Shown: in pieces, positions 3,156-58,909 of the stretch
Layout of the letters: every line of letters begins with the position of its first letter
How positions within the stretch are numbered: position 1 is the first letter of the stretch
DNA from: Octopus sinensis
Lineage: Eukaryota
Direction of reading: 5' to 3'
DNA: 64,000 nucleotides
Assembly: GCF_006345805.1 (NCBI RefSeq)
Contig: NC_043011.1
Span: 67,778,464-67,842,463 of the forward strand
Translations under genes and position numbers: made by a program
Notes under the pieces: model-generated
Told to the model about the DNA's origin: nothing
The model's input: only the letters and a program-made list of their open reading frames with translations
Databases searched by the model: none

Positions 3156-3344
3156 CTAGTGAGAGAAAGGATGCGGATACTTGTTTAATGTACAGGGAAC
3201 TACACGGGAAGAAACCACTTTGATATGAATATTGATGATGTTGTTCTTGTTGTTAAAGTTGTTGTCGTTGATGTTATTGCCGTTGTTGTTATTGTTTTTG
3301 TTGTCTTCGTGTTGCTGTTATTCTTTGTTACTCTTTTACTCTTT

Positions 3345-3755: not shown

Positions 3756-3764
3756 TTGTTATTG

Positions 3765-6199: not shown

Positions 6200-6690
6200 T
6201 TCCTTAAATAGTCAGAACTTTATTCTCGGTCACAAAGAACATCTATACACCCTCACCCACATGATTGACCGATGCCTGACCTGTAGAATTCTTCAGCCAC
6301 CGGTTCTCAGCATACACTGATAAACAGTTTCGCCATGGGCTCTTAGGAGCACAGTTCGATTTGGTTTTTGCTCCGCCTCTGTTCTTTTTTGTTTCTCTAA
6401 CGGATTTCCTTTTTTCTTCCTGAAGAGAAAGACACAATATGGTCCCATTATTCAATCGGATTTTGGTAATTTGTGCCTTTCGAAACACGTGTAGAATGAA
6501 ATAAAACGATTTCTGTTCAATCTGCGTTCAGCTCCATTTCTTCAATTCACCAATAATGTTTTAATTTCAATTATCCGCACCAACGCACGGTTGCAACGCC
6601 AGATGGTTGTACCTCAACCGTGCTGTTTACTGCTGTGATTTTTGCTACTAAGGTATCGGTTAACTTTTGTTTAATCTACAACAAGATTAT
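6200..6690 (+). mobile_element. Penelope-like pLTR-type repeat carrying the hammerhead; second copy at 52780-53058
   Basis: 6465-6670 near-identical to the reverse complement of 52780-52966; flanked by microsatellites. Confidence 0.65.
6417..6496 (+). ncRNA. type I hammerhead ribozyme with intact catalytic core
   Basis: Stem I TTC(6417-19)/GAA(6494-96); CTGAAGA 6420-26; stem II GAAAGACACAA/TTGTGCCTTTC (10 of 11 pairs); GAAA 6482-85; palindromic stem III ACACGTGT; GTA cleavage triplet ending at 6493. Confidence 0.8.
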
Positions 6691-6707
6691 TCATCTTTCT
6701 ATTTCAC

Positions 6708-6755
<48 letters not shown>

Positions 6756-6769
6756 TATATATATATATT

Positions 6770-6802
<33 letters not shown>

Positions 6803-6828
6803 GTACATATACATATTATATATATATA

Positions 6829-7160
6829 AGGGTAAAGACCCCCTTCGGTCATGAATGACCATGGGATTGCACCTAGAAAGTTACCCTCCTAGACACAAGT
6901 CTGGGTAAGGTTGTTCTATGGAAGACCAACAGTCACCCATGCATACCGGCCTCCCCTCTCCACGCCACCAGTGTTATCCAAGGGAAAGACAAAGGTCGAT
7001 ACAGCTTGGCACCTGTGACGTCGCAACTCATTTCTACAGCTGAGTGAACTGGAGCAACGTGAAATAAAGTGTCTTGCTCAAGAACACAACACGCAGCCCG
7101 GTCCGGGATTCGAGCTCACAACCTCACGATCGTAAGCTCGACGCTCTAACCACTGAGCCA
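6829..7160 (-). mobile_element. tRNA-headed SINE family C
   Basis: Minus strand TGGCTCAGTGGTTAGAGCG (A box)...GAGCTCGAATCCCGG (B box), then TTCTTGAGCAAGACACTT...CACTCAGCTGTA. Confidence 0.85.
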
Positions 7161-7289
7161 TATATACACATATATGTGTGTGTATATGTGTATATACTAC
7201 GTACGTGCGTATGTATGTATGTATCTATGTATGTATGTACGTACGTATGGATAGTTAAAAGAGAATTCTATACCATATCGTGTAAAACG

Positions 7290-7327
<38 letters not shown>

Positions 7328-7388
<61 letters not shown>

Positions 7389-7393
7389 GTAGG

Positions 7394-7459
<66 letters not shown>

Positions 7460-7550
7460 TAGATAGATAGATAGATAGATAGATAGATTGATAGATAGAT
7501 AGATAGTTAGATATAGATAGATATAGATAGATAGATAGATATAGATAGAT

Positions 7551-7629
<79 letters not shown>

Positions 7630-7676
7630 TAGATAGATATAGATAGATAGATAGATAGATATAGATAGATAGATAG
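7328..7676. repeat. (GATA)n microsatellite at the 3' end of a Tx1-like LINE
   Basis: Direct reading. Confidence 0.95.
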
Positions 7677-7679
7677 GTA

Positions 7680-7849
7680 TGTTTCTTTATTAGCCACACA
7701 GGGCTGCACACAGATAGAACAAATTACAAGGTAGAGCTTTTCTTTGAAGGTATTAAAAAAAAAAAAAAAAAAAGGAAGGGGGAGGTTCGATCAAAAGGGA
7801 TCAAAAGGATCGTAAAAGGAGAGAAAGAGGACAAAAATAAGGGGGGTTA

Positions 7850-7881
<32 letters not shown>

Positions 7882-9127
7882 AGAGGAAAAAAAAATGATC
7901 AATAGGGATCGTTATCACAGAAATGTCAATATGAAGTGTAAAGGGGAGGACAGGTGAGGTTTACCCGTGGAAAGAAAAGCCTGCGGAAAAGACCACGGTA
8001 ACCTCGGTCAATGAAGTCACATTTTATATTTCTTTTTTTTTTTTTTTTTTTTTTTGCAAATAAGCAACTCTCTGTTTTCGATTTCTGGGTTCATAGACTA
8101 TGCTCAAGGTGGCTTCGTCATTCATACGTGCCATTCTACATTCACCACCCATCTTTTTTTAAAACATTCGCTAGACAAAACTTGCCTCTCTACTCTCACT
8201 TTCCTTTTCAAGTGGTACTTGAAGAAGTTGATGAGAGATTGACCAGAGAGGAAAGTGTTTGTCTCCAATCCTTTCAGACGCGTCCACCAGATACATTCTT
8301 TCGCCATAGCCACAAGGATGATGAAAATAGCTCTTCCTTCCCGTTTGAAGGAAGGAGGCGTGACAATATTGACGATAGACTCAGCTGATAAACCGACACG
8401 TCCCACACGTGACAGCAGTTGTTCGACATAAGCCCACAGGTCGGAAATGTTGTGGACACTGAACGAGTGCGTGCAGAACGGTTTCGTCGCTCTGACCGCA
8501 TCTCGGGCAGGTCGGCCCCGTGTTTCTCGAGCGTGTCTGTAGAGCTTATCCCGAACGGGTAGCGCTTCTCGGTAGCACTGCCAGGCCAGGGATCTCTGGA
8601 AGTTGTCCATGGCCCTGCCCGAAAGTCGTCCCGAACAGGCGGGTCAGGTACTCCTCGTCGACGTCCAGGTTCGCCCCGAGCTCGTCGTCGTACCTCCCCT
8701 CCACTAAACCCCTATAGAATGCTTTGGTTGTGTTGAAGTCACTTAAGGTCGACCCAGACGGCAGAGTTGCTTGAGAGCAACGCGACACTCGCGGTGCCAT
8801 TCGCCCTTCCTCGGCCTCTTTGATCCACGACTGCAGTTCGGTCATGGAGACGAGCTGCGGGAAAGCGTGCCTCACAAACGGCGACCACACCTGTTCACCG
8901 TCGTCTACATAGAGCCAGAGATGTCGCAGTCTCAGCGCGTGTCTGCGCATCATCAACCACGGCATGCCCAGCCCTCCTTTAAACGGGTGTTGACAGCAAA
9001 TGGATCGCCTGACCATCGGGACGCATCCTTTCCACAAGAAGCGAAAGAGGATGCGTTGTAGTTTGGTGATGGTAGGGTCGGGACAAGGTACGACGGTCAG
9101 GCGGCGTAGTAGATGACGGACGCGATG
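7680..9127 (-). mobile_element. 5'-truncated Tx1/L1-clade LINE (ORF2 C-terminus + 3' UTR)
   Basis: [25 protein letters not shown]...CCQHPFKGGLGM and NFFKYHLKRKVRVER segments, homologous to 35392-36564; T-rich 3' UTR ending TAATAAAGAAAC. Confidence 0.9.
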
Positions 9128-9137
9128 ATAGATAGAG

Positions 9138-9189
<52 letters not shown>

Positions 9190-9214
9190 TAGACAGATAG
9201 ATATATAGATAGAT

Positions 9215-9273
<59 letters not shown>
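9127..9273. repeat. (GATA)n microsatellite at the 5' junction of the Tx1-like LINE
   Basis: Direct reading. Confidence 0.95.
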
Positions 9274-9305
9274 CAAGTACATACATGCATAAACATCTAC
9301 ATACA

Positions 9306-9341
<36 letters not shown>

Positions 9342-10075
9342 AATAAAATAGAACATATGCATATATATAAACATATATGTACGTACCTACCTCTACATGT
9401 ACATATACACGCATATATGTGTACAGGACAGCAAAAAGACGTCGAACACATAGAGAGACGAAAAACATAGACACAAACCAAGGAACAAGACAAGCAAAAA
9501 AAAAGAGATACAGGACAATAAGCACAACGAAAAATCCCCTTCTTCAGTCCGCTAAGGTTTCATTACTAAACGTTTCGAAGGATAAAAGCGAGGACGTATA
9601 CTTCGAAGAAAACTTCCTCCTGCGAAAAGCAAATCAATTAAAATTCTGAGATCTTTTCGCAGAGGGTAAAATAAAGCAAGACGGTAACGACAGTACAAAC
9701 ATATAAACAGTAAAAAATATATATATAAAGAGTGGAAAAAAAATATATAACAGTGAGAGACAGGACAAGGAGAACAAGATAAGAAGGGCTGTTAACGGCC
9801 GGACGAAAAAAGTATTGCAACGCTGGATTATAGTGGACGACGAGAGAGAAAAAATGTCGACCAGTAGCCTTAGAAGGCGGGCGAGAAAAGACAGGATAGC
9901 AGTTACGACGGAAGTATCGTCGCAGATGGACGAGGGAATGGGGGAGGAGGAGCAAGAGGAAGAGAGAGAAGAAGGGGAATGGTGCGAGGAGACCATGAAG
10001 AATGGTGAAAGGGAGAGAGAGAAAGAAGAGAGAGAGAGAGGAAGAAGACAAGTATATATATATATATATATATAT

Positions 10076-11946: not shown

Positions 11947-12046
11947 NNNNNNNNNNNNNNNNNNNNNNNNNNNNNNNNNNNNNNNNNNNNNNNNNNNNNN
12001 NNNNNNNNNNNNNNNNNNNNNNNNNNNNNNNNNNNNNNNNNNNNNN
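11947..12046. other. assembly gap (100 N)
   Basis: Run of N. Confidence 1.
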
Positions 12047-12852: not shown

Positions 12853-12899
<47 letters not shown>

Positions 12900-13108
12900 T
12901 ATATAATGTTATTTAATATGTATGTAATATATATGTATATATATCTATATATGTATTATATATTATATGATTAATATATATATATGTATATATATTATAT
13001 GTAGATCTATATATTATATATATCTATAGTATATGTATATATATATATATATATATGTATATGTATATATATAATATATCTGTATATTTATATAGCTATA
13101 TATATATA

Positions 13109-13139
<31 letters not shown>

Positions 13140-13358
13140 GTATATGTTTCTCTATAGATATATATATATTATATGTATATATAGATTATATATATATTAT
13201 AGATGTATATATATATATAATATGTATATGTATATATAGTATATATATAATATTATATATATATATATGTACATACTATATATATATATCTAGATAATAT
13301 ATATATATATAGATAGGTATATATATATATACATTATAATATATATAGTATACATTAC

Positions 13359-13401
<43 letters not shown>

Positions 13402-13471
13402 CATATATAGAATATATATATACATATACATATATTATATATATATATATATACATATACATAATATATAC

Positions 13472-13503
<32 letters not shown>

Positions 13504-13800
13504 GTATATAGGTATATAGGTATATATACATATATATATATGTATATATAATATATATATATGTATATATATATTATGTAATATATATATATACGTTATG
13601 TTATATATATAATATATATATATTTATATATATATATAGATAATATATATATATATTATGTATATATATATATATATGTATATATATATTATATATATAT
13701 ATATATGTATATATAGATATATATATATGTATATATATCTATATGTATTATATATATATATATGTATGTATATATATATATATTATCTATATAGTATATA
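12850..13800. repeat. degenerate (TA)n microsatellite
   Basis: Direct reading. Confidence 0.95.
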
Positions 13801-13895
13801 TTATACTTTTGATACTTTGATACTTTGATAGGTTCGGCCATTATTGGCCCAGGCCATGTCTAACTTAATAGCACCCCCTGGTGAAGTCTTTCAAG

Positions 13896-16800
13896 TCAGA
13901 ATTTGGGCACTATGGCCCACTCAAGTAGAGAGTTATGTTTACAGAGACATATCCGGGTGTAGGGGGTTTATCCCGGGATTTCTTGAAGGAATCTGTCCAA
14001 AGACTTCTTGAACCCATAGGGTCAGTTTCTGTTTTAATGTGTTTTGTTGTGTAATGTTAAAGAGAGCGGGCCAATGAGGTGAAATAATTGTGCCGTATTG
14101 TTGTTATGAGATGAGAGTGCGATTTTTGTTTGGGCGGATGGCACGGGGCCAAGCCTTGGATGTACCTTAAGGTGATGCCAACATCATTGGGCAATGCTGA
14201 TGGAATATTTTCCACATCATGCAGATGATGTAGCGCTCACGACGACGTTGGAAGAATAGAGTTTTAGCTTTCTAGTCGACCCCAATAGTCGAGGCCTGTC
14301 ATGCCATCTATCTTTTTTTGTGATTGCCCTTGAGAGGCTTCAACTTTTATGATACCTTGTATTGTGTGGGGAGACCCACAGTGGACAACAGTATTCAAGG
14401 TGGGGTCGGGCAAAAGTGGAGAAGAGAAGGATAATGGTGTGGATATCTCTCGACTGGAAAGTTCTGAGAATCCAGGAACACATTCTGCGGGCCATGAACT
14501 TTGGTTGTTTTATGAGTGGCCCAGCTTACGTGTTGTCCACAATTACTCCCAAGTCTCTGATGTTGTTGGACGCCGCGAGAGTTTCACCTGAAGGAAGGGA
14601 GTATGGGAGTTTCAGGGCATCCTCTTTTCCAAGTGGATTAGCTCAAATTTATCCTCGTTCAGCCAGCATATTGTTTTTTCTGCCCATTGGATAACAGCCA
14701 GTAGATCTGACTGAAGGCATGTCCGGTCACTCGCCTCATTTATGACCTTCTGTAGCTTGGAGTCATCTGCAAGATTTTTATGTTGCTGTGCTTGATGATG
14801 TCATTAATGTCATTAATGTAAATGATGAAAAGAAGTGGGCCCAGCACAGTGCCTTGCGGAACGCCACTACTGACTTTGGCTTGGGCTTGATTTTACCCCT
14901 TCAACTACAACATGTTGAGATCTGTCTGTCAGGAAACACTTAATCCATTTCAGTAACTTTCCAGAGACACCAATATTGGATAGTTTTTTCAATAGGATCT
15001 TGTGATCGACCCTGTCGAAGGCCTTACTGAAATCAAGGTAGATGACATCGGTGTTGGAGCCCTCTCCCAAAGCTCTCAAAATGTCCTCAAAGTGATGCAG
15101 GAGCTGCGTTAAGGCAGTCCCTTCCATTACGGAACCCATGTTGGTTGGAGATCAGCCGTCTGTTGCTTTCCAGAAATGGGTTATTCGAGATCTCACCACC
15201 CTCTCAAATACCTGATGATATGAGAGGTGAGTGAGATCGGACGGTTAATTCACTGCAAGGGACTTGTTTCCCTTTTGAAACTGGGACAACAGACTGGGAC
15301 AGAAGGTTTTTGGAATATAGCCAGCATCCAGTGAGTTCTCCACAGATTAGCAAAGGGAGATGCAAGATGCAAGTTGGTGTCGACACACTTCAGGACACAA
15401 GCAGGGAACCTATCGGGGCCTACTGCTGAATGGGTTTTATTTCGTTTATCGCCGCTAAGAACATCAGGGGCACTAAACGTTATGTCCGATATAGTGTGTG
15501 GGGGTTGACATCACTGATACAGCCCAGATCGGCCATATCAGGATTGCTGAAACAGAGCAGTATTGTTTCTGCAGTATCTCGGCCATGGATTTGGCATTAT
15601 CTTGGAGAGTGCCGTTTCGTCAATTAGAGGGCCTACAGTGGAGACAGTGACCCTGCGTTTCCTCGCAAATGAAAAGAACACTTTGGGGTGAGTTTGATTT
15701 TTTCAATGGCCACTTCTCCTCAGCTGATCTTTGGTTATTGATGAGGGTCTTCATGCATTGTTGGAGGTTATATTTTTTGGATCAAGCAGTGCGATAGCCG
15801 TCGAATGTGTGTGTTGCTGTTGGCAACTTAGTTTGTTAATTTTTTGTTTGTTCTTTTTATTTTTCTGATAATGGGTTTTTCTGTTTGGGGGATTCTGCAC
15901 TTTTTGTTCACAGGTCTTGGTGGGGAGTGTTTTGCACATATGTCTGTGACGGTGTCTACAAGATCTGCCAAGATGTTTTATGGTTGTGGAGATGTGTGTA
16001 GTGTAAAGGACCAGTCAACATTTGATAGCTCGTTCCTGATTGCATCCCAGTTGGCTTATAGAGATCCATGTTGTCAAATGGGTGGGCTGGAGGAGGAAGG
16101 TCACTAGATTAGCTTTCGGCTGGTGGAATTGTCATGTTACAGAGAACCATGTCATGGTCTGAAAGAAGGGTTTTTTCCACTGTAACGTTATGTATAGTGT
16201 TAGTGTGGTTACTAAACACTAGGTCCAAAATGTTCTGATGTCTTGTTGGTGCAAGGACAAGTTGGGACAAGAAAAACTCATTCGTAAAGTCGAAAAGTGA
16301 CTCTGCTGCTTTTTTGTCAGCGGTTGAGGGGGGAGTGCTTGGTTTCAAAACAGTTTGTAGTCCAGTCAACACAGGGTAGATTGAAGTCTCCCATCATGAG
16401 TATGTTGCTAGAATGGCACTGTTGAATAAAGCACTTAATGCTGTTGAGGCATTCTTTAAAGCACAGTATGGGTGTTGTGTTGGGGCGCCTATAGAGCCCA
16501 ATTACTGTCAGGTCATTGGCTTTGTTGTGCACGGTGACTGATTCACAGTAGCCGTGGAGAATATACTATTTCCATCTGCTGTAAATGAATCATGCAGGAA
16601 AATGGCAGTTCCACCATTCCTCCTGCCGCGATACGATCCGCGCGGATGGTTGTGAATTCTTCACTCTCACTTCGGCTTCCAAGTGGGAGTTGTCAAGGTG
16701 GGTCTCAGTGAGAATGAAGAAAGGGATGTGGTGTGAATGGTTACCAACCCGTCTTCAATGAATTGGACCTTCCATTTTGTGCATTGATGGAAGGGCTGAC

Positions 16801-16900
16801 ACCTTGTGCATTGAGTAGGAATTGGAGGTTAGTGTAGTGGCTGGTTTTGACTGTTGCAGGGGGCTGGATTTTTTGGTGTGTGTTAGTGGCAGCAATGTGG
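13896..16900 (-). pseudogene. LINE ORF2 (APE + RT), frameshifted, with deletions
   Basis: ORF-track fragments 16317-16532, 16109-16372 and 14867-15139 align to copy B ORF2. Confidence 0.9.
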
Positions 16901-17154
16901 GGAATTGGTGCACTGGGGTAATAGCATAGGATGGTTGTTGAGTGATGGCTAGAATGTTTTGTGTATCTCTTTTGCCATGTTCAACATGGCTAAAAAAGAA
17001 TTTTCCTGCATAGGGAGCAGTTTTTGGCTGGAGGTGTGGTTGCACTGTTGGATAGGGTTGTAGTTTCCACTTTTGTTGTTGTTGTTTTTGTGTCTTCCTG
17101 AAAAGACTGGACCAGCATTACTGCAGCATGGTGTGTTTCTATTTTTATTGTTTA

Positions 17155-18113
17155 TCAGGTTTGTGTGTTGGCTTGAGGCCCCGTTTCTGTTTGTGCGTCG
17201 GTCCCTGGAAGATGAGTGAAGGGACAGTCACTCAGTAGACATGTTCTCTCACGTTTGGAATACCGGCAGATTTTGGGACTCCGAGTTGTGTGTGTTTTGA
17301 ATTTCGATTTACTATTTGGTGGTGTTGATGTTATTGTGGGATGCGTGCTTTGGCCTTGGCCGGTAGTGCGTCTAGTGCCGGGTAGATGCGTGAAGATGCA
17401 GTCACTATTTGTGCAGAGTCTCTGGCGCAGTGAATAGCGGCATATTTGGGGATTTCTTGTTTGAGCCGTGAGGGGCGCATTCTGCTTCCTATGTTTCTTT
17501 AAGTTTTTGTTACTGCAGTAGTATTGAGGTGGTGATGTGGGGGAAGAGGGCAGTGGTTTCTTATTTGGTTTTTCTGTTGGTATTTTTGGTGATAGAAGAC
17601 GATGGTGGCAGCGGTGGTGATGATGATGATGATAATTGTGGTGGTTGCTGTGAGAGCGGTGAAAAGATACTGGCATTTAAGTGAATCGTCTAGTAAGCTA
17701 GAGTTGAGAGTGGCTGTTGTTCTTGTTGCTGTGGCTGTTGTTTTTGTTGTTGTGCGCCTGACCGATGTCAGGGTCAGCCATTGTGCTGGGAACCAGGAGT
17801 GGCTCATTCTGTTGTTGTTGTGTTGTTGTGGCTGCTGATTTTCTAGCTGTTTGTTGTCTTGAACTGTGAAAATATGTAGAAGCTTTTCATAATGGCCTCT
17901 TATCAGTTTGAAAGATACTTCGATATGTTTCAACTTGCTACGAATCTGTTTGACGGATCGTGTGTTGACCACTTGTGATGTTTTTTCGGCAATCTCATTC
18001 AAACACAAGACATTTAGATTTTCTGTTTGGGAAAGAGAGAGCCATGTGTTTATTAAAACATCAATTTCGTTATCAGACCAATTTCGTCTGTTGCAGGCCT
18101 GCAAGTTAGTCAT
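17155..18113 (-). pseudogene. LINE ORF1: Myb/SANT-like domain + low-complexity linker + 2 CCCH fingers (frameshifted)
   Basis: NWSDNEIDVLINTW...LNEIAEKT...RSVKQIRSKLKHIEVSFK; C-x8-C-x4-C-x3-H at 17386-17442 and 17212-17268. Confidence 0.75.
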
Positions 18114-18435
18114 GTTTGTTTTTTCTTTTGTTTTGTTCCTTTTGATTTTTGAAAATATATATATTCTTTCTTGGGAGTTAAGAAGTGTATATATATATAA
18201 ATGTTCTCTCTTAAGGGTGTGAGTTTTTGATTATTTTTGGTGTTTGGGATATTAAAAGAAAAACAGGTGTATATAACAATTTGTAGTTAATGAAAACGTA
18301 CTTACGGGTTTGTAGGCAAACACGTGGTTACAAATATATATATATTTAAGGTCAGTTAGTTTTGAATCTGTGTAGCTTGCTACTGACTTGGGAGAGAAAC
18401 AAATAGACGTCCGTCCACTTCAACAGTTAATCCAT

Positions 18436-18525
18436 ATTATATGTGTATATATAATATATATTATATGTATATATATATATATATGTGTATATATATATAT
18501 ATATATGTTGTATGATATATATATG

Positions 18526-18561
<36 letters not shown>

Positions 18562-18877
18562 TATGTAATATATATATATATTAGTTATAATATATATATG
18601 TATATATATATATATATGTAATATATATATGAGATAATATATATATATATATGTATAGTATATAGTATATATATATATATTATATATATGTTATATATAT
18701 GTATATATAGTATATATATATATATATTGTATAGTATATATAATATATATATATATATGTAGTATATATATATATATATATGTATGTATTATATATTATA
18801 TATTATATCTATATATAATGTATATATATATATGTATGTAATATATATATATTATATATTATATATATATATAATAT

Positions 18878-18911
<34 letters not shown>

Positions 18912-18942
18912 TATATATACTATGTTATATATATATATAATC

Positions 18943-18997
<55 letters not shown>

Positions 18998-18998
18998 G

Positions 18999-19038
<40 letters not shown>

Positions 19039-19066
19039 ATATATATATAATATATATATATATGAT
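18436..19066. repeat. degenerate (TA)n microsatellite
   Basis: Direct reading. Confidence 0.95.
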
Positions 19067-19910
19067 ATATAAACAAGAAGGGTAGTAATATTATTTACTA
19101 CCAGGTGCCCAGCACAAATACGAATTAGTCATAAGGACAAAAATATTATTCATATGAAAAAATTATTCATGTAGTTATACAATTAAGGGCTCCTAAATAA
19201 AGATGGTCCGAGTGCTGGGAACATAAAAAGGGGATGAATTATCGAGAGTGAAAATCAAAACGTTTACCGATAACTTTAACAACTCGTACCGCGGTTTCTG
19301 CTTCTTCTCTAGCAAAACACAGAATATGTTTGCTAAGGCCAGCTTCATCAGCGAGTCGCCTGAATTTAATCGAGGTCTGCAGCGATGTGGGACTATATGT
19401 TACATCCGACTACTAGCAGATCTTAACTTTTCAAATCTCTGCGCAGACGCAAAATTTACACGGGCATGCCGGGAAGAATTTTACGAATAAATTCATCATG
19501 TAGTATGCGAATATAAACAAGAAGGGTAGTATGACTAATTCGTCTTTTGTGCTGGGCACCTGGTAGTAAATAATATTACTACCCTTCTTGTTTATATTCG
19601 CATACTACATGATGAATTTATTCGTAAAATTCTTCCCGGCATGCCCGTGTAAATTTTGCGTCTGCGCAGAGATTTGAAAAGTTAAGATCTGCTAGTAGTC
19701 GGATGTAACATATAGTCCCACATCGCTGCAGACCTCGATTAAATTCAGGCGACTCGCTGATGAAGCTGGCCTTAGCAAACATATTCTGTGTTTTGCTAGA
19801 AAGAAGCAGAAACCGCGGTACGAGTTGTTAAAGTTATCGGTAAACGTTTTTGATTTTCACTCTCGATAAATTCATCCCCTTTTTATGTTCCCAGCACTCG
19901 GCATCTTTAT
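19067..19910. mobile_element. permuted and inverted duplication (~335-bp arms 19197-19531 / 19577-19910) with hammerhead-like relic
   Basis: Near-identical inverted arms; the 45-bp spacer is the reverse complement of 19088-19131; 21-mer ATATAAACAAGAAGGGTAGTA at 19067 and 19511; CTGATGA A GCT ggcctt AGC AAAC at 19757. Confidence 0.75.
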
Positions 19911-52779: not shown

Positions 52780-53058
52780 AAAGTTTAACCGATACCTTAG
52801 TAGCAAAAATCACAGCAGTAAACAGCACGGTTGGAGGTACAACCATATGGTGTTGCAACCGTGCGGATAATTGAAATTAAAACATTATTGGTGAATTGAA
52901 GAAATGGAGCTGAACGCAGATTGAACAGAAATCGTTTTATTTCATTCTACACGTGTTTCGAAAGGCGGTAATTGTGCCTTTCGAAACACGTGTAGAATGA
53001 AATAAAACGATTTCTGTTCAATCTGCGTTCAGCTCCATTTCTTCAATTCACCAATAAT
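52780..53058 (-). mobile_element. second copy of the 6.4-kb hammerhead family with perfect 83-bp inverted duplication
   Basis: 52884-52966 / 52976-53058 exact reverse complements; contains the 3' half of the hammerhead (CTTTC GAAAC ACGT GTA GAA) on both strands. Confidence 0.8.
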
Positions 53059-53091
53059 ATATATATATTATATATATTATATATATATATA

Positions 53092-53146
<55 letters not shown>

Positions 53147-53175
53147 ATATATACACACATATACATATATACATA

Positions 53176-53226
<51 letters not shown>

Positions 53227-53263
53227 ATATATACACACATATACATATATACATATATACATA

Positions 53264-53309
<46 letters not shown>

Positions 53310-53348
53310 TATATATATATATATGTATATGTGTGTATATACATATAT

Positions 53349-53383
<35 letters not shown>

Positions 53384-53853
53384 CCTGAAGCTGAGACGAT
53401 AAGACGTGTTTTTACTCCTCTCTGCGCCGGTCAGCAGCAAGCTTCACAGCTACATTCGTCGTAATTGACCATCACATATATTCCTGTATATTTGAAACCA
53501 CGCTTTTTCCCAACTCGTGAGTAGACTTTTCCTTAACCACAAACTATTTTCATAATTTTCAAACGACCAAATATTTTCAAACACCTTCTGATAACTAAAG
53601 GATCACCCACACATTAAAAATTAGAAAAAGAGGGGAAAAAAAGAAAAGAAAAGAAAGATAAAATAACTACAAGCTCATAATTCAAATACAAACTTCTCAG
53701 TATTACAGCAAACATTCTGTACAATCAATTCTACATACTTCTCCTTAAAAAAAAAATAAATAAAATAAAATAAAATAAAATAAAATAAAATAATTAAAAG
53801 TAATCAACAAAACAAACGAACAAAATAAAATTTAATAAAACATATCAACCAGA

Positions 53854-55290
53854 ATGGCTAGCCACCAAAAATCCAACAAAAACTGGTCTGATAATGAAGT
53901 CGACGTTCTTATCAACACATGGCATGGCCTTACCGAAACAGAGAGCATAGGTGCTTCGTATCTGAACGAAATTGCTAAACGAGCAGTTCACCATTTGCAA
54001 ACTCGATCTGAACAGCAGATACAAAATAAATTAAAACAAATCGAAGTTGCTTTTAAATTAATAAATAAACACTTCGATAAACTGAGATGTGTTTTCTCTT
54101 CGAACGCATCACCGGCGCAACAACAACAAACTCAGCGGCAACAACAACAACAACAGCTACAGCAACAACAACAACTTCAGCAGCAATAACCTCAGCGGCA
54201 ACAACAACAACAACCTCAGCGGCAACAACAACAACAGATACAGCAACAACAACAGGATGAACCACTCCTCGATTCATCTACAATGGCCGATTTGCTAAAC
54301 GAAACGATTGACCCCCCAGTCATCAGGGTCACACAGCAGGAAGCACGACCCCTTCCTTTCACTGCCCCAGCAGCTCAATCATCATCATTGTCAACACCAT
54401 CTCCTCTGCTTACTACTACTAGTACAACTCCAACTATGTATCGACAAACATCTTTGTCTTGGAATCGACCTCCTCAATCATTACCACTGTCAACATCTCT
54501 TCTACCTACTACTACTACTACAACTACTACTACTAATGCTATCTCAAGGAATTCACCTCCTACAGGTCACAAAGGTCGCCAAAACTTCAACAAACTATCA
54601 TCTACACCAGTGTTTCCCAACCTTTTTTCCCGGCGCCCCACTTTTTCATAGCAAAAGTTTTTACGCCCCACCTTTTCCCATGTCCACTCACATTTACAAG
54701 TACATGTGGGCCTACTTACAATTATTTTCACAGCCCACGTCTATGCCCCGCGCCCCACCTGAATTTTCTCAGGCCCCACCAGTGGGGCGTACGCCCCACC
54801 TTGGGAATCACTGATCTACACCTTTCACAACTCACACACACACGCACCTATACACCCACTCGAAACCCCATCATTTGCCGATATTCTCTTCGCCATAGAC
54901 TGTGAACTGATAGAGACTGCAAATTCACCCATTTACCTGGAACAAAACGCTCTATCCCCACAAACTACAACAGCAACCACCATAATACAACACCACCACA
55001 ACCACCAATATCTCAAACAAGGAATCCCCAAATCTGCCGCTATTCCCAGCGAGACAGATTGTGTCTGCACAGGGATTGCCCCTTTACCCATCTCCCAGGG
55101 ACTCGTCGGACATTTAAAGATAACCACTCACATAAAAATAGCCGCAGCCACAGTCACCTGCGGTTCCCTAGACAGGAAACCACCTCTTCTTCCTCTTTTT
55201 TAGCTATGATGAATCTAGCAAAAGAACTGGAAAAAAACATCCGAGCTATCACCCACCACCATCCACCACAAATACCCCACTGCACATGCC
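53854..55290 (+). pseudogene. LINE ORF1: Myb/SANT-like + polyQ + S/T/P-rich + 2 CCCH fingers, disrupted
   Basis: NWSDNEVDVLINTW...LNEIAKRA...RSEQQIQNKLKQIEVAFK; CCCH at 54876-54932 (second Cys now a stop) and 55035-55091. Confidence 0.75.
54608..54813. mobile_element. hAT MITE nested in LINE ORF1
   Basis: TIR CAGTGTTTCCCAA...TTGGGAATCACTG; perfect 8-bp TSD ATCTACAC (54600-07, 54814-21). Confidence 0.92.
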
Positions 55291-58200
55291 ATTAAAAAGC
55301 AATCAAATAAACAAATCACCAAAACAATTAAAACCATCCACTCTCGCCTCAACATTTCTGCTTAATGCCCAAGGCATCAGCCCTTCCACCAATACACAAA
55401 AATGGAAGATAAGATTCCTGGAGGACTGGGTCGAGGCCCATCCAAACCACATCCCTTTCTTCGTCCTCACTGAAACCCATCTTAGTGACCTCCACTTGGA
55501 AGCCGAGGTGAAAGTTAAAAATTTCAAAACTATTCGTGCTGATCGTGCTGGCAGAAGAAAGGGTGGGACTGCCATTTATGTCCATGATTCATTCTCAACA
55601 GAAGCCATGAACATATTTTCGAATGGATACTGCGAAGCAGTCGCTGTATTCAGTCAAACCAACAACTTAACAGTAGTTGGGCTCTACAGACCACCCCAAA
55701 CGCCCCTACCATGCTTCAAGGAATGCCTCAACAGCATAAAGTGTTTCATTCAGCAGTGTCAACCTGACAACATTTTAATGATGGGAGACTTCAACCTTCC
55801 CGGGGTTGACTGGTCTACAAACAGTCTGCCGCCAGGTTCTTCTCTCTCAACCCCTGACAGGGAGGCAGTGGAATCGCTTCTTGACTTCATGGATGACTTC
55901 TTCTTGTCCCAACTGGTACTCAAACCAACGAGATGTCACAAAAACGTCTTAGACTTAATTTTCAGCAATCACACTGATACTATCCACAATATTGCAGTGG
56001 AGAAAACCCTACTCTCCGACCATGACATGGTTCTCTGTGATCTGAAATTTCACTGGCCAAAATGCAAAACAAATGTCATCCCTCCTGTTCATCCATTTGA
56101 CACTATGGATTTCCACAATGCAAACTGGGAAGCGATCAATAATGATCTTGCACAAGTCGATTGGTCCTTCACGCACACATACACACCCACTAACATTAAA
56201 AAGTCCTGGCAGTCACTTGTAGACATCATCACGAACATATGTGCAAGACACACCCCATTAAGATCTGCAAACAAATCTAAGTGTCGAATCCCTAGAAATA
56301 GAAAATCTCTCATAAGGAAAATTAAAAGAATCAACAAAAAGATCAACATGCTGAAATACTGTCAACAGCAACACACCAACCTGACTGCCATCTCGTCGCT
56401 AGAGATTAAAAAACATAAACTCCAAAACAACATGATGTCTATCATCAATAGTCAGCGAAGAGCTGAAGAGGCCTGGGCCATTGAGAAGATCAAACTCAAT
56501 CCCAAGTGTTCTTTTCATTTGCAAAAAAACACAGAGTCACTGGTTCTACTGTTGGCCCTCTGATTGATGAAAATGGTACTCTTCAAGACAATGCCAAAAC
56601 CATGGGAGAGATATTGCAGAAACAATATTGCTCTGTTTTCAGCAATCCTGATATGACTGATCTGGGCTGTATCAGTGATGTTACTCCCCAATACACTTTA
56701 TCGGACATAACATTTGGCGCTCCTGATGTCTTAGCAGCAATAAAGGAAATGAAGCATAATTCAGCAGTAGGTCCCGATAGGTTCCTGCTTGTGTCTTGAA
56801 GATGTGTCAAAACCAACTTGCACCCCCTCTAGCCAATCTGTGGCGGAACTCACTGGATGCTGGATATATACCAGAGGACCTTCTATCCCAGTCTGTTGTC
56901 CCAGTTTCAAAAAAGGAAACAAATCGCTTGCCGTGAATTACCGTCCAATCTCACTCACCTCTCATATCATCAAGGTATTTGAGAGGGTGCTGAGATCGCG
57001 TATGACTCACTTCCTTGAGAGGCATAATATGCTGAACCCCAACCAGCATGGATTCCGTAATGGGAGAGATTGCCTGACGCAGCTACTGCATCATTTTGAT
57101 GACATTTTGAGAGCCTTGGGAGAAGGTTCCAACACTGATGTCATCTACCTTTATTTCAGCAAGGCCTTTGACAGGGTTGATCATAAGATCCTTCTGAGAA
57201 AGCTGTCCAATATTGGTGTCACTGGAAAGTTGCTGCAGTGGATCAAGTGCTTCCTGTCTAACAGAACCCAACATGTGGTAGTCGAAGGAGTCAAATCCAG
57301 CCCAGCCAAAATCAGCAGTGGTGTCCCACAAGGCACTGTGTTGGGCCCACTTCTCTTCATCATCTACATAAATGATATTACTGATACCATCAAACACAGT
57401 AACATCAGAAATTTCGCTGATGACTCCAAGCTCCAGAAGGTCATCAATGGCGTGGATGACCGAATAAACCTTCAGTCAGACCTACTGGCTGTTGTCCAAT
57501 GGGCGGAAAAGAATAACATGTTGCTAAATGAAGACAAATTTGAACTGATCCACTTTGGAAGGGAGGACACTCTGAAACTCCCATACTCTCTTCCTTCTGG
57601 AGAAATTCTCATGGCATCCAACAACATCAGAGACCTGGGAGTAACAGTGGACAACAACATAAGCTGGGCTACACATATAAGCAGCAAAGTTGACATGGCC
57701 CGCAGAATGTGTTCCTGGATTCTCAGAACCTTCCAGTCGAGAGATTCCTACGCTATTATCCTTCTCTTCTCCACTTTTGCCCGACCCCACCTTGAATACT
57801 GCTGTCCACTGTGGTCTCCCTACACAAAACAAAATATTATGAGAATTGAAGCTCCCCAAAGGTCAATCACAAAAAAGATAGATGGCATGTCAGACCTTGA
57901 CTACTGGGGTAGACTAGAGAAGCTGAAATTGTATTCACTCCAACGACGCCGTGAACGCTACATTATCTGTATGATGTGGAAAATATTCCACCAGCACTGT
58001 CCAAATGATGTTGGCATCACCTTCAAAATGCATCCAAGGCTTGGACCACGTGCCATCCGTCCACAACAAAAATCTAAATTGCATCACATAACGACAATAC
58101 GGCACAACTATTTCACCTCAATTGGACCTGCTCTCTTCAACATTACACCAGGGCACATCAAAAAAGAAACTGACCACACAAAATTCAAGAAGTCTTTGGA

Positions 58201-58300
58201 CAAATTCCTTCAAACAGTACCGGACAAACCACCCACACCTGGATATGTCTCCGCAAACAATAACTCTCTGCTCGAATGGGCCTTGGTGCCCAAATCCTGA
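55286..58300 (+). pseudogene. LINE ORF2 (APE + RT), two frameshifts (~56510, ~56790)
   Basis: LLNAQGI, LTETHL, MMGDFNLP, LDLIF, LSDH; [55 protein letters not shown]. Confidence 0.93.
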
Positions 58301-58396
58301 ACTGAAAGACTTCACCAGGTGGTGCTATTAAGTTAGACATGGCCTGGGCCAATACTGGCCAAAACCTTTCTAAGTTATTCTAAGTTATGTATATGT

Positions 58397-58909
58397 GTGT
58401 ATAAAAGAAGGGCTGGTAGAGCTAAAGGAAAAGCTCAAGCAGGACCAAAGGGTGAAAAAACCAGGAATAGAAGTGGAACCGCAAAAGATAGAAACGGACA
58501 GCGCACACAGGTGTGTAGGTTCTACCTGAGAGGTTCCTGCTGGCATGGAAAGGAAGGTGCAGGCTGCCGCTTTGCACATTGGGGACCCTGCCACAGAGAC
58601 ACGAGGCAGATGGACAAACCATCAACACAAGGAAAAGGGATGGACCACGCACCACTTGCCCCAAAGCGGAGGTACGCAGATGTTGTGCGTGCCACAAACC
58701 ACCAACATGATGTTGTCGAAAGGGCAGCTGCTGAGCAACAATCTTTTTTGTGCATGGCACAAAAGATTGTACAGCAGCTGACCTGGCTTCATCAAACCCA
58801 AGCCCGCAGGTGGGACTACCCACTATATACCAGACCACCACCACAGCAAACAGACCCAGGATGGACACCACCGGCAACAACATACACCTCACCTCGATGC
58901 TCCTACTGA
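58397..58909 (+). CDS. LINE ORF1 C-terminal part with CCCH finger
   Basis: VCRFYLRGSCWHGKEGAGCRFAH (C-x7-C-x8-C-x3-H); overlaps the probable ORF2 start by ~50 nt. Confidence 0.7.
   Translation: MYKRRAGRAKGKAQAGPKGEKTRNRSGTAKDRNGQRTQVCRFYLRGSCWHGKEGAGCRFAHWGPCHRDTRQMDKPSTQGKGMDHAPLAPKRRYADVVRATNHQHDVVERAAAEQQSFLCMAQKIVQQLTWLHQTQARRWDYPLYTRPPPQQTDPGWTPPATTYTSPRCSY

What the first reader, a model, noticed from the sequence alone, without database searches (positions are those of the whole stretch)
17155..18113. APE-type LINE with a Myb/SANT-like, low-complexity, 2x CCCH ORF1
Seen in two diverged copies (17155-18113 minus; 53854-55290 plus): an N-terminal ~75-aa domain W(S)D.E.DVLI..W...LNEIA......RS..QI..KLK.IE..FK, then a Q/N/T/P-rich linker, then two C-x8-C-x4-C-x3-H fingers each followed by LPGT.R. 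The two domains are conserved while the linker is not. Known: the pattern fits Myb/SANT-like (trihelix/MADF-type) DNA-binding domains. Jockey-group ORF1s usually carry RRM, CCHC, PHD or esterase modules, and Myb domains are familiar from R2-type elements and Harbinger proteins. Inference: an ORF1 with both DNA-binding and RNA-binding modules joined by a prion-like linker, possibly tethering the RNP to target DNA or regulating its own promoter. I do not recall this layout being described.
Basis: partly seen in the sequence, partly recalled or inferred. Interest (0 to 1): 0.82.

Follow-up and report, generated by a model that had tools for sequence, protein, structure and literature searches.

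The report
LINE ORF1 with Myb-like and CCCH domains
Two decayed copies of a CR1-like jumping gene (LINE) encode a first protein built from a Myb/SANT-like DNA-binding-type domain, a low-complexity linker and two CCCH zinc fingers, a layout absent from published surveys of LINE proteins, and an intact copy of it exists in the octopod Argonauta hians.

Summary
Element A (minus strand, about 13803-18432) and element B (plus strand, about 53389-58388) are full-length, decayed APE+RT LINEs. The linker between them is not conserved.

The N-terminal domain is Myb/SANT-like. It scores 27.6 bits against Pfam PF13837 (cutoff 27). Its nearest cellular relatives among 1.8 billion proteins are multi-repeat Myb_DNA-bind_4 proteins (hhalign 97.8%). 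AlphaFold2 predicts a helical bundle (pLDDT 86).

The fingers are CCCH-type by motif only; they fall below the Pfam cutoff. Synonymous sites are saturated while nonsynonymous distance is 0.14-0.28, so both modules evolved under purifying selection.

Five further copies have the same layout. One, in Argonauta hians, has an intact 407-aa ORF1 and an open ORF2. A relative carries a PHD-like module in place of Myb.

Every copy with readable flanks sits in (TA)n microsatellite, which covers 7% of the window. This fits DNA tethering by ORF1p but does not prove it.

Literature searches found no description of this layout. Verdict: a new variant of a known kind, moderately interesting.

The parts
13803..18432 (-). 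Element A: full-length but decayed CR1-like LINE (5' UTR, ORF1, ORF2, 3' UTR, tail)
   Evidence: tblastn maps ORF1, APE and RT in order. The 5' UTR is homologous to B's up to the microsatellite border. The 3' end was read.
18114..18432 (-). A 5' UTR. Shares GTCAG(T/C)AGCAAGCT and a GT(A/G)AGTA motif with B
17868..18083 (-). A ORF1 Myb/SANT-like domain core, 72 aa (ORF1 ATG at 18111-18113)
   Evidence: Pfam PF13837 27.6 bits against cutoff 27; hhalign 97.8%; AlphaFold2 pLDDT 86; coordinates
17443..17867 (-). A ORF1 low-complexity linker (T/Q/N/H-rich) with frameshifts
   Evidence: no tblastn match to B
17368..17442 (-). A CCCH finger 1: CRYSLRQRLCTNSDCIFTH + LPGTRR
17200..17268 (-). A CCCH finger 2: CRYSKRERTCLLSDCPFTH + LPGT
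16941..17000 (-). A remnant of the conserved ORF1 C-terminal helix motif (FFFSHVEHGKRDTQNILAIT). It lies beyond the premature stop at 17155
   Evidence: ORF 16755-17045; comparison with B, L001, L003 and L006
13902..16892 (-). A ORF2 remnants (APE then RT), with many frameshifts
13803..13875 (-). A conserved 3' UTR 30-mer (13846-13875) and (TATCAAAG)n tail (13803-13830)
12856..13805 (.). (TA)n array abutting A's 3' end
18446..19071 (.). (TA)n array abutting A's 5' end
53389..58388 (+). Element B: full-length but decayed LINE of a sister family (RT about 47% identical to A)
53881..54096 (+). B ORF1 Myb/SANT-like core (ATG at 53854; TAA stop in the polyQ run at 54187)
   Evidence: Pfam PF13837 26.6 bits
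54608..54813 (+). MITE inserted in B's ORF1 linker. TIRs CAGTGTTTCCCAA / TTGGGAATCACTG; 8-bp duplication ATCTACAC
54876..54950 (+). B CCCH finger 1, with TGA at the second Cys position
55035..55109 (+). B CCCH finger 2: CRYSQRDRLCLHRDCPFTH + LPGTRR
55194..55253 (+). B ORF1 C-terminal helix motif SFLAMMNLAKELEKNIRAIT. ORF1 stops at 55293-55295, overlapping the ORF2 ATG at 55286
55286..58300 (+). B ORF2: APE (55286-56563) and RT (56789-58300), with a frame break between them
58321..58388 (+). B conserved 3' UTR 30-mer (58321-58350) and (TTCTAAGTTA)2 tail (58368-58388)
53057..53383 (.). (TA)n array abutting B's 5' end
58397..58909 (+). Element C ORF1 (neighbouring, more distant CR1-like LINE). 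One CCCH-like finger (58514-58579) and the SFLCMAQKIV helix motif (58742-58789). Its N-terminus abuts the junction with B, so it may be 5'-truncated

Best explanation
This is the ORF1 of a lineage of CR1/L2-type, APE-encoding LINE retrotransposons. The host is probably a cephalopod.

ORF1p has five parts in order:
1. an N-terminal Myb/SANT-like (Myb_DNA-bind_4, trihelix-type) helical domain;
2. a low-complexity, presumably disordered linker of variable length and composition;
3. two CCCH zinc fingers, each with a basic LPGT(R/K)R tail;
4. a short spacer;
5. a C-terminal amphipathic helix motif that ends at the ORF2 start.

Shown here: the domain identities, their order, their conservation under purifying selection, their fixed position upstream of APE+RT, and the existence of an intact copy.

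Inferred: the CCCH fingers plus the C-terminal helix do the RNA binding, chaperoning and multimerisation that RRM/CCHC or coiled-coil/RRM/CTD modules do in other LINE ORF1 proteins. The N-terminal module is an exchangeable nuclear tether. A relative with 55% RT identity has a PHD-like finger at the same position.

The Myb-like domain would then hold the RNP on DNA or chromatin. It possibly holds it on TA-rich microsatellite DNA, where every copy with readable flanks is found. The APE nicks there and target-primed reverse transcription starts from the conserved 3' UTR and tail.

Both window copies are dead.
For: Architecture and context.

Myb assignment:
- Pfam PF13837 passes the gathering cutoff for A (27.6 against 27) and for relative P0003 (31.7).
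- An exhaustive HMM search of 1.84 billion representatives returns 14 hits. Three are LINE ORF1 N-termini. All six of the other eleven that I scanned against Pfam carry 3-7 Myb_DNA-bind_4 repeats.
- hhalign gives probability 97.8%, E = 1.1e-12.
- AlphaFold2 with a 31-sequence alignment gives pLDDT 85.9 and pTM 0.70, with helices at 14-30, 35-48, 54-73 and 75-83.
- The top Foldseek matches are all three-helix DNA-binding domains, including ZZZ3 Myb-like, GT-1 and RAP1.

CCCH: the C, C, C and H positions are invariant in 7 fingers. The only PDB sequence hits are CCCH proteins, Nab2 and MBNL.

Selection: pS is 0.74-0.84 (saturated). pN is 0.24-0.28 in the Myb domain and 0.14-0.20 in the fingers.

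Independent copies with the same order of parts are L001, L002, L003, L005 and L006; L004 shows only the Myb-like part. L006, from Argonauta hians, has an intact 407-aa ORF1 and an ORF2 frame open from 5152 to 8217.

Module swap: the L009 ORF1 has a C4HC3 PHD-like pattern, three CCCH-like fingers and the same type of C-terminal helix.

(TA)n context:
- A is flanked on both sides by the two largest (TA)n arrays of the window, and B on its 5' side.
- The Argonauta copy is flanked on both sides.
- L004 and L005 are flanked at their 5' ends.
- (TA)n covers only 7.1% of the window.
- Relatives L007 and L008, which show no Myb ORF1, are not in (TA)n.
Against: - The Pfam score is marginal. B scores 26.6 bits, below the cutoff, and the Argonauta ORF1 gets no Pfam hit at E <= 1.
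- Foldseek E-values are not significant; the best is 0.45.
- The AlphaFold2 alignment was built from Myb-type sequences, so the model leans towards that fold.
- The CCCH match is below the Pfam cutoff: zf-CCCH_2 scores 20 bits against 25.8.
- Nothing shows that the Myb-like domain binds DNA. SANT-type members of this fold bind histones or proteins.
- The (TA)n association is not specific to Myb-bearing copies as far as I can tell. Neighbouring elements C and D, from a more distant family whose N-terminus is unknown, also abut (TA)n. APE cleavage preference could therefore explain it.
- The sample is small, and Logan contigs tend to end in repeats.
- No retrotransposition has been shown.
Confidence: 0.7

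Rival explanations
1. The architecture is the same, but the Myb/SANT-like module is a SANT-type chromatin or protein-interaction domain (histone tails, host factors) or an oligomerisation module, not a sequence-specific DNA binder. The (TA)n bias comes from the APE's cleavage preference or from annealing of the 3' tail at the nick.
For: - A relative has a PHD-like finger, a histone-tail reader type, at the same position. This suggests functional equivalence as a chromatin reader.
- Elements C and D, from a more distant family, also lie in (TA)n.
- Helix 3 has a clean heptad pattern and gives weak matches to GCN4-type coiled coils, E = 0.06-0.2.
- The domain's net charge is about 0 to +1 in A and B.
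Against: - The nearest relatives are Myb_DNA-bind_4 repeats. That family includes DNA-binding trihelix factors such as GT-1, which is itself among the weak, non-significant Foldseek matches.
- Helix 3 is strongly basic, +4 to +7, as expected of a recognition helix.
- The coiled-coil hits are not significant.
- Relatives L007 and L008 are not in (TA)n.
Confidence: 0.25
2. The Myb-CCCH reading frame is not a working LINE protein. It is a host gene fragment or chance ORF captured at the 5' end of a few copies and carried along passively.
For: - Both window copies are broken.
- Three protein searches found almost no called proteins of this kind.
- L003 shows that 5' regions can be joined to an unrelated LINE ORF2.
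Against: - The order of parts is the same in seven copies from at least four sources, always immediately upstream of the same ORF2 lineage. The ORF1 stop overlaps the ORF2 start.
- Argonauta has an intact 407-aa ORF1.
- Synonymous sites are saturated while pN is 0.14-0.28 between families. That requires long-term selection on the protein while the elements were active.
Confidence: 0.03
3. The N-terminal domain is not Myb/SANT-related at all. The match is a low-complexity or amphipathic-helix artefact.
For: - Pfam scores are marginal.
- The Argonauta ORF1 has no Pfam hit.
- No Foldseek match is significant.
- A PDB sequence search finds only coiled coils.
Against: - hhalign gives 97.8%, E = 1e-12, over 66 aligned columns. 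The alignment includes the W-x3-E-x3-L-x3-W helix 1 signature and the R(S/T)xxQ(C/I)xxK(I/L)K helix 3 signature.
- In the exhaustive search, every non-LINE hit that I scanned (six of eleven) is a bona fide multi-repeat PF13837 protein.
Confidence: 0.02

Closest known systems
CR1/L2-group LINE ORF1 proteins of type III/V (PHD-containing or unclassified; Kapitonov and Jurka 2003; Khazina and Weichenrieder 2009; Metcalfe and Casane 2014, PMC4120745)
   Same: - ORF1 sits upstream of an APE+RT ORF2.
- The build is modular, with a small N-terminal chromatin- or nucleic-acid-reader module.
- The 3' end has a conserved UTR and a short tandem-repeat tail rather than poly(A).
- A 55%-RT relative (L009) has a PHD-like finger where this element has Myb.
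   Different: - No RRM, CCHC knuckle, esterase, Tnp22 or PHD domain was found by Pfam.
- It has a Myb_DNA-bind_4-type domain and CCCH fingers instead. Neither appears in the published ORF1 tables.
R2 (RLE-type LINE) N-terminal zinc-finger + Myb DNA-binding region, and the Myb-like domain of TRAS/SART ORF2
   Same: A Myb-type helical domain encoded by a non-LTR retrotransposon and used, in those elements, to bind the target DNA (my own knowledge of the R2 and TRAS literature).
   Different: - Those domains are part of the single ORF or of ORF2, on the same polypeptide as the RT. Here the domain is in ORF1p.
- They belong to the classical Myb subtype, not the trihelix / Myb_DNA-bind_4 subtype.
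- Target binding is untested here.
Myb/SANT-like (trihelix) DNA-binding protein of PIF/Harbinger transposons, and cellular Myb_DNA-bind_4 repeat proteins
   Same: Same domain family by profile comparison. In Harbinger, a transposon-encoded accessory protein uses the domain to bind transposon or target DNA (my own knowledge).
   Different: - Harbinger is a DNA transposon with a separate transposase.
- It has no CCCH fingers.
- The cellular relatives found here carry 3-7 tandem copies, some behind a TINF2_N domain. The LINE has a single copy.
Tandem CCCH RNA-binding proteins (Nab2, Muscleblind/MBNL, TTP type)
   Same: - Cys3His spacing C-x8-C-x4-C-x3-H, with an aromatic residue two positions before the His.
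- Two fingers in tandem.
- These are the only PDB sequence matches.
   Different: - Scores are below family cutoffs.
- The inter-finger spacer is long (about 40-50 aa) and poorly conserved.
- A conserved LPGT(R/K)R tail follows each finger.
Microsatellite-specific LINEs (R1-clade Waldo, Mino, Kibi, Koshi; R4-clade Dong)
   Same: Copies are embedded in one kind of simple repeat. Here that is (TA)n on both flanks of A and of the Argonauta copy.
   Different: - Those elements belong to other clades.
- Their specificity is attributed to the endonuclease (my own knowledge).
- I know of no (TA)n-specific CR1-like family.
- The specificity here rests on about seven junctions only.

Membership tests
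APE-type non-LTR retrotransposon (LINE) | ORF2 with an N-terminal AP-endonuclease domain followed by a reverse transcriptase | tested here: met
   B: Exo_endo_phos_2 E = 4.9e-14 and RVT_1 E = 9.7e-29. A: the same domains in the same order by tblastn. Argonauta copy.
CR1/L2 group of LINEs | 3' end without poly(A): a conserved 3' UTR followed by a few copies of a short (5-10 nt) tandem repeat | tested here: met
   Tails are (TATCAAAG)n in A, (TTCTAAGTTA)2 in B and (ATCTAAGT)3 in Argonauta. The 30-nt 3' UTR core is identical in A and B and differs by 2 changes in Argonauta. The predicted hairpins show no covariation.
CR1/L2 group of LINEs | RT domain groups with reference CR1/L2/Rex1 sequences in a phylogeny | not tested
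The best named RT hits are unclassified 'hypothetical proteins' of Argonauta hians (62%) and Mnemiopsis leidyi.
Myb/SANT-like DNA-binding domain, Pfam PF13837 (Myb_DNA-bind_4) | Score at or above the Pfam gathering cutoff (27 bits) | tested here: met
   A scores 27.6 bits and P0003 (the L003 copy) 31.7 bits. B scores 26.6 bits, just below. P0005, P0007 and the Argonauta ORF1 get no hit. Met, but marginal.
Myb/SANT-like DNA-binding domain, Pfam PF13837 (Myb_DNA-bind_4) | Profile-level homology to undisputed members | tested here: met
   hhalign of 7 LINE domains against 17 cellular PF13837 repeats gives probability 97.8%, E = 1.1e-12. The exhaustive hmmsearch gives hits at E = 3e-12 to 6e-4, with 3-7 matched stretches per cellular hit.
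Myb/SANT-like DNA-binding domain, Pfam PF13837 (Myb_DNA-bind_4) | Three-helix homeodomain-like fold | tested here: inconclusive
   The AlphaFold2 model has pLDDT 85.9 and three main helices plus a fourth. The Foldseek top hits are homeodomains, ZZZ3 Myb-like, GT-1 and RAP1, but E >= 0.45 and TM is about 0.5. The two-sequence model was poor, pLDDT 61.
Myb/SANT-like DNA-binding domain, Pfam PF13837 (Myb_DNA-bind_4) | Binds DNA | not testable with these tools
   Only indirect evidence: a basic helix 3 (+4 to +7) and the (TA)n context.
CCCH (C3H1) zinc finger | Invariant Cys-Cys-Cys-His with C-x7-8-C-x4-5-C-x3-H spacing and an aromatic residue before the His | tested here: met
   Seven fingers from five copies all have C-x8-C-x4-C-x3-H. 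Six of the seven have F two positions before the His.
CCCH (C3H1) zinc finger | Score above a Pfam CCCH family cutoff | tested here: not met
   zf-CCCH_2 scores 20.0 bits against a cutoff of 25.8; the other CCCH families score lower. A PDB profile search hits only CCCH proteins, best E = 0.016. I therefore call the fingers 'CCCH-type by motif', not a member of a named Pfam family.
Published LINE ORF1 types I-IV (RRM+CCHC; coiled coil+RRM+CTD; PHD±RRM; esterase) | Presence of at least one of RRM, CCHC knuckle, Tnp22/CTD, PHD or esterase | tested here: not met
   Pfam finds none of these at E <= 1 in the A, B or Argonauta ORF1. The ORF1 would fall into type V, 'unclassified'.
Target-specific (microsatellite) LINE | Insertions consistently inside one repeat type, far above its genomic share | tested here: inconclusive
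   In (TA)n: A on both flanks, B at 5', D at 5', C at 3', Argonauta on both flanks, L004 and L005 at 5'. (TA)n covers 7.1% of the window. The sample is about seven junctions and no genome-wide count was possible.

The most novel reading that the evidence does not exclude
This would be the first APE-type LINE lineage in which target choice is made by ORF1p. A single trihelix-type Myb domain at the ORF1p N-terminus would recognise (TA)n microsatellite DNA and deliver the RNP there. In sister lineages the same N-terminal slot is filled by a PHD finger that reads chromatin instead. ORF1p would then be a programmable 'address' module on a common CCCH RNA-binding core.
Probability: 0.2. Interest if true: 0.8.

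Novelty: new variant of a known kind. Interest (0 to 1): 0.58.

Why it matters
LINE ORF1 proteins are the least understood part of the most abundant class of animal transposons. They are usually described as five types built from RRM, CCHC, coiled-coil/CTD, PHD or esterase modules.

An ORF1 built from a Myb/SANT-like domain and CCCH fingers adds a sixth layout. It shows that RNA binding in LINE RNPs can be done by CCCH fingers.

Together with the PHD-bearing relative, it also gives a clean natural example of swapping an N-terminal 'reader' module on a constant core.

If the Myb domain accounts for the (TA)n insertion bias, it would be a new route to target specificity in APE-type LINEs, acting through ORF1p rather than the endonuclease. 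The apparently intact Argonauta hians copy could then be developed into an experimental system.

If not, it remains a well-supported new ORF1 variant in an under-annotated animal group.

Tried and rejected
- Protein word-index searches with the ORF1 domains returned only two fragments. No annotated or named protein of this kind was found.
- The JGI metagenome scans, by protein patterns and by the conserved 3' UTR 30-mer, found nothing.
- An exact look-up of the window's APE ORF in public assemblies found no record, so the host genome was not identified directly.
- Sample accessions (SRR11869390/91/94, SRR29346471, SAMN05421426, COWA16) appear in no searchable paper.
- The first AlphaFold2 model, from a two-sequence alignment, was poor (pLDDT 61) and gave no Foldseek hit. 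It was replaced by a 31-sequence model.
- The PDB sequence search with the Myb profile gave only insignificant GCN4-type coiled-coil hits. I considered a coiled-coil reading and rejected it as the main one, given.
- NG86 dS could not be computed because synonymous sites are saturated, so I report p-distances instead.
- I looked for close relatives of element C, to learn whether its full-length ORF1 has a Myb domain. None of the retrieved proteins exceeds 40% identity.
- L007 and L008 gave no Myb or CCCH.
- The L009 ORF1 has no Pfam hit, so its PHD and CCCH modules are called by Cys/His pattern only.
- The RNAalifold hairpins in the 3' UTR show no covariation, so a structure is not demonstrated.
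Full report
**What is at the coordinates**

The window is eukaryotic, TE-dense, microsatellite-rich DNA (38.5% GC).

On the minus strand an ORF1 starts at ATG 18113. It reads MTNLQACNRRNWSDNEIDVLINTW...KLLHIF, then a T/Q/N/H-rich stretch. After frameshifts come two fingers, CRYSLRQRLCTNSDCIFTH-LPGTRR and CRYSKRERTCLLSDCPFTH-LPGT.

On the plus strand a second ORF1 starts at 53854 with a 54%-identical N-terminal domain. It continues with a polyQ run that ends in a TAA stop and a long low-complexity stretch. Then come two fingers of the same spacing, the first with TGA at the second Cys position.

tblastn between the copies gives E = 1.7e-23 for the N-terminal domain and E = 1.1e-26 for the fingers, with nothing in between.

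I add a third conserved piece, the motif SFLxMxNLxKExxxxI at the very C-terminus of ORF1. It lies at A 17000-16941, beyond a premature stop, and at B 55194-55253. It ends where ORF2 begins; in B the ORF1 stop at 55293-55295 overlaps the ORF2 ATG at 55286.

**The elements**

Both ORF1s are followed by APE and RT domains. For B, Pfam gives Exo_endo_phos_2 E = 4.9e-14 and RVT_1 E = 9.7e-29. For A, tblastn finds the same domains in the same order.

- Element A spans about 13803-18432 on the minus strand.
- Element B spans about 53389-58388 on the plus strand.

Their 5' UTRs are homologous right up to the flanking repeat, so both are full length.

Their 3' ends carry a 30-nt core, GGTGCTATTAAGTTAGACATGGCCTGGGCC, that is identical in A and B. 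A few copies of a short repeat follow: (TATCAAAG)n in A and (TTCTAAGTTA)2 in B. There is no poly(A). To my knowledge this is the CR1/L2 style of 3' end. An RT phylogeny could not be run for lack of reference sequences.

A and B are about 47% identical in the RT, so they are sister families rather than two copies of one family.

Both copies are dead:
- A has several frameshifts in ORF1 and ORF2.
- B has a stop in the polyQ run, frameshifts and the TGA in finger 1.
- B also has a frame break between APE and RT, and a 206-bp MITE (54608-54813, 8-bp duplication ATCTACAC) inside the ORF1 linker.

**The N-terminal domain is Myb/SANT-like**

- Pfam PF13837 (Myb_DNA-bind_4) matches residues 9-73 of A at 27.6 bits (cutoff 27) and of B at 26.6 bits.
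- An exhaustive HMMER search of 1.84 billion representative proteins, using the A+B profile, returned 14 hits.
  - Three are short ORFs that proved to be N-termini of other copies of this LINE. One of them, P0003, scores 31.7 bits on PF13837.
  - I scanned six of the other eleven against Pfam. All are long cellular proteins with three to seven Myb_DNA-bind_4 repeats, and two of them also have a TINF2_N domain.
- Profile-profile comparison of seven LINE domains with 17 of those cellular repeats gives probability 97.8%, E = 1.1e-12 over 66 columns. It aligns the W-x3-E-x3-L-x3-W helix and the R(S/T)xxQxxxKxK helix.
- AlphaFold2 with a 31-sequence alignment gives pLDDT 85.9 and pTM 0.70, with helices at 14-30, 35-48, 54-73 and 75-83.
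- Foldseek against the PDB gives no significant match (best E = 0.45). The leading hits are almost all three-helix DNA-binding domains: Exd/PBX homeodomains, the ZZZ3 Myb-like domain, the Arabidopsis GT-1 trihelix domain and RAP1.
- A PDB sequence search found only insignificant GCN4-type coiled coils, reflecting the heptad pattern of helix 3.

I accept the Myb/SANT-like assignment. It says nothing about whether the domain binds DNA. Helix 3 is strongly basic, +4 to +7.

**The fingers**

Seven fingers from five copies share invariant C, C, C and H with C-x8-C-x4-C-x3-H spacing. Six have Phe two residues before the His, and a G-T follows three residues after the His.

Pfam CCCH families match below their cutoffs; zf-CCCH_2 scores 20 bits against 25.8. 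A profile search of the PDB hits CCCH proteins only: Nab2 at E = 0.016, and MBNL1/2. I therefore call them CCCH-type by motif.

**Selection**

Between A, B and L001 the synonymous p-distance is 0.74-0.84, which is saturated. The nonsynonymous p-distance is 0.24-0.28 in the Myb domain and 0.14-0.20 in the fingers. Both modules were therefore kept by selection while the families diverged. This rules out a passively carried chance ORF.

**Other copies**

The protein databases hold almost nothing of this ORF1. The few hits, and the RT search, led to seven loci.

| Locus | Source | What it shows |
|---|---|---|
| L001 | ENA metagenome scaffold | Myb, fingers, C-terminal motif, APE and RT in order; all degraded |
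| L002 | Logan SRR11869390 | Two degraded fingers, C-terminal motif, ORF2 start |
| L003 | Logan SRR29346471 | Myb, one finger, C-terminal motif; degraded |
| L004 | Logan SRR11869391 | Myb only |
| L005 | Logan SRR11869394 | Myb, two fingers, C-terminal motif; degraded |
| L006 | Argonauta hians GCA_054771915.1, BAAFZT010000031.1 | Intact ORF1 and open ORF2 (below) |
| L009 | JGI metagenome 3300061557 | Relative with a PHD-like module (below) |

L006 has an intact 407-aa ORF1. It comprises the Myb-like domain, about 220 aa of T/P/N/H-rich linker, two C-x8-C-x4-C-x3-H fingers and the motif SPFLDLLKITQKL. Its ORF2 frame is open from 5152 to 8217, though with no ATG near the junction.

The best named RT hit is also Argonauta hians (62% identity), so the window probably comes from a cephalopod. 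This is inference.

**A relative with a different N-terminal module**

L009 has 55% RT identity to B. Its ORF1 shows, in order:
- a C-x2-C-x17-C-x2-C-x4-H-x2-C-x15-C-x2-C pattern, which is a PHD signature;
- three CCCH-like fingers, the last with the same C-x8-C-x4-C-x3-H spacing;
- a C-terminal DFLKHLAQIK helix.

It has no Pfam hit, and its single weak PDB hit is the ZC3H12C CCCH finger. These calls therefore rest on motifs.

Element C, next to B in the window (ORF1 58397-58909), has one CCCH-like finger and an SFLCMAQKIV motif.

The CCCH-plus-helix core thus seems common to this LINE lineage, with the N-terminal slot variable: PHD-like or Myb-like.

**Where the copies sit**

(TA)n arrays cover 7.1% of the window.

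- A lies between the two largest arrays, 12856-13805 and 18446-19071.
- B's 5' end abuts the 53057-53383 array. Its 3' tail is followed by 16 nt of TA/TG before element C begins.
- The Argonauta copy is flanked on both sides by (TA)n/(TAAA)n.
- L004 and L005 start in TA/TG repeats.
- Elements C and D, from a more distant family whose N-terminus is unknown, also touch (TA)n.
- Relatives L007 and L008 do not.

The pattern is unlikely by chance, roughly 0.07 per independent insertion. The sample is small, however, and the pattern does not separate ORF1p from APE as the cause.

**How it most likely works**

Shown: an ORF1p with a Myb/SANT-like head, a disordered linker, two CCCH fingers and a C-terminal helix, conserved under selection in a CR1-like LINE lineage.

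Inferred:
- The fingers and the helix bind and coat the element's RNA, as RRM/CCHC or coiled-coil/RRM/CTD modules do in other LINEs.
- The head tethers the RNP to DNA or chromatin. Given the flanks, this may be TA-rich microsatellite DNA, where the APE nicks and reverse transcription starts from the conserved 3' UTR and tail.

The main rival keeps the architecture but makes the head a SANT-type chromatin or protein-interaction module, equivalent to the PHD of the relative, and assigns the TA bias to the endonuclease.

**Comparison with what is known**

The published ORF1 classification has types I-V. The 2014 survey of Jockey-superfamily ORF1s lists RRM, CCHC, Tnp22, PHD, esterase and a zinc-finger/leucine-zipper, but no Myb and no CCCH (PMC4120745).

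A 2026 vertebrate CR1-group study, a gastropod study and a bivalve/mollusc study do not mention them either. Full-text searches combining ORF1 or non-LTR with Myb and/or CCCH found nothing relevant.

Myb-type domains are known, from my own knowledge, in R2 (N-terminal, on the RT polypeptide), in TRAS/SART ORF2 and in the Harbinger accessory protein. None of these is an ORF1p with CCCH fingers.

Repbase and Dfam could not be queried, so an unannotated entry may exist.

**Verdict**

This is a real, well-supported and apparently undescribed ORF1 layout: a new variant of a known kind. The targeting idea is attractive and testable, but unproven.

Noticed in passing
window 12856-13805, 18446-19071, 53057-53383, 63680-64000; L006 about 3000-3186 and 8313 onward: Every copy of this LINE lineage with readable flanks is embedded in or abuts (TA)n-type microsatellite. 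A and the Argonauta copy have it on both sides. (TA)n covers only 7.1% of the window.
   Followed up: partly
window 54608-54813: A 206-bp MITE lies inside B's ORF1 linker. Its terminal inverted repeats are CAGTGTTTCCCAA...TTGGGAATCACTG and its 8-bp target duplication is ATCTACAC (hAT-like duplication length).
   Followed up: partly
window 18307-18313 (minus strand), 53517-53523; L006 3338-3344: A splice-donor-like heptamer GT(A/G)AGTA is conserved about 120-150 nt into the 5' UTR of A, B and the Argonauta copy. A and B also share a GTCAG(T/C)AGCAAGCT motif near the 5' end. Their function (initiator, U1 site or intron) is unknown.
   Followed up: no
window 13846-13875 (minus strand), 58321-58350; L006 8241-8270: A 30-nt 3' UTR core is identical in A and B and has 2 changes in Argonauta, although the proteins are only about 50-60% identical. 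Two hairpins are predicted but without covariation. It is probably the RT recognition site.
   Followed up: partly
window 58397-61997 (element C) and 62476-63677 minus strand (element D): Two further CR1-like LINE copies of a more distant family (RT 41% identical to B). C has a 170-aa ORF1 with one C-x7-C-x8-C-x3-H finger (weak Pfam Torus hit), an 831-aa ORF2 piece and an (AAATCA)4 tail. D is truncated at the 5' end within the APE, directly against (TA)n.
   Followed up: partly
L009 1-1317: The ORF1 of a relative (RT 55% identical to B) has a PHD-like C4HC3 pattern, three CCCH-like fingers and a C-terminal helix. This suggests the N-terminal module was swapped, PHD for Myb. It has no Pfam hit.
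   Followed up: partly
L003 about 1282-4563: The first ~68 codons of the ORF2 reading frame (which overlaps the end of ORF1) belong to this family. From about nt 1486 the frame continues into an unrelated, intact LINE ORF2; the whole ORF is 1093 aa. This is either a nested insertion, a natural ORF1/ORF2 chimera or an assembly artefact.
   Followed up: no
L006 5152-5450: In the Argonauta copy the ORF2 frame is open across the ORF1 stop but has no ATG until 5416. This suggests non-AUG initiation or reinitiation. In B, the ORF2 ATG overlaps the ORF1 stop.
   Followed up: no
window 61968-62175 and 52900-53040: Two palindromic, MITE-like hairpin elements. One interrupts the TA run just 3' of element C. 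The other lies immediately 5' of the (TA)n array upstream of B.
   Followed up: no
window 35392-40154 minus strand, and 8122-9493 minus strand: An unrelated LINE family. It has APE+RT ORFs at 38810-35392 and a 132-aa upstream ORF at 40154-39756. It is flanked by (CTAT)n on one side and (CATA)n/(TA)n on the other. A second fragment lies at 8122-9493.
   Followed up: no
window 11947-12046: A run of 100 N, which is an assembly gap.
   Followed up: no
P0006, P0008; P0009, P0011 (by eye): The nearest cellular relatives of the LINE domain include proteins with an N-terminal TINF2_N (telomere-protein TIN2) domain followed by six Myb_DNA-bind_4 repeats. Pfam confirms this for P0006 and P0008. P0009 and P0011 were not scanned but have similar N-termini. 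It is an unusual architecture in its own right.
   Followed up: no
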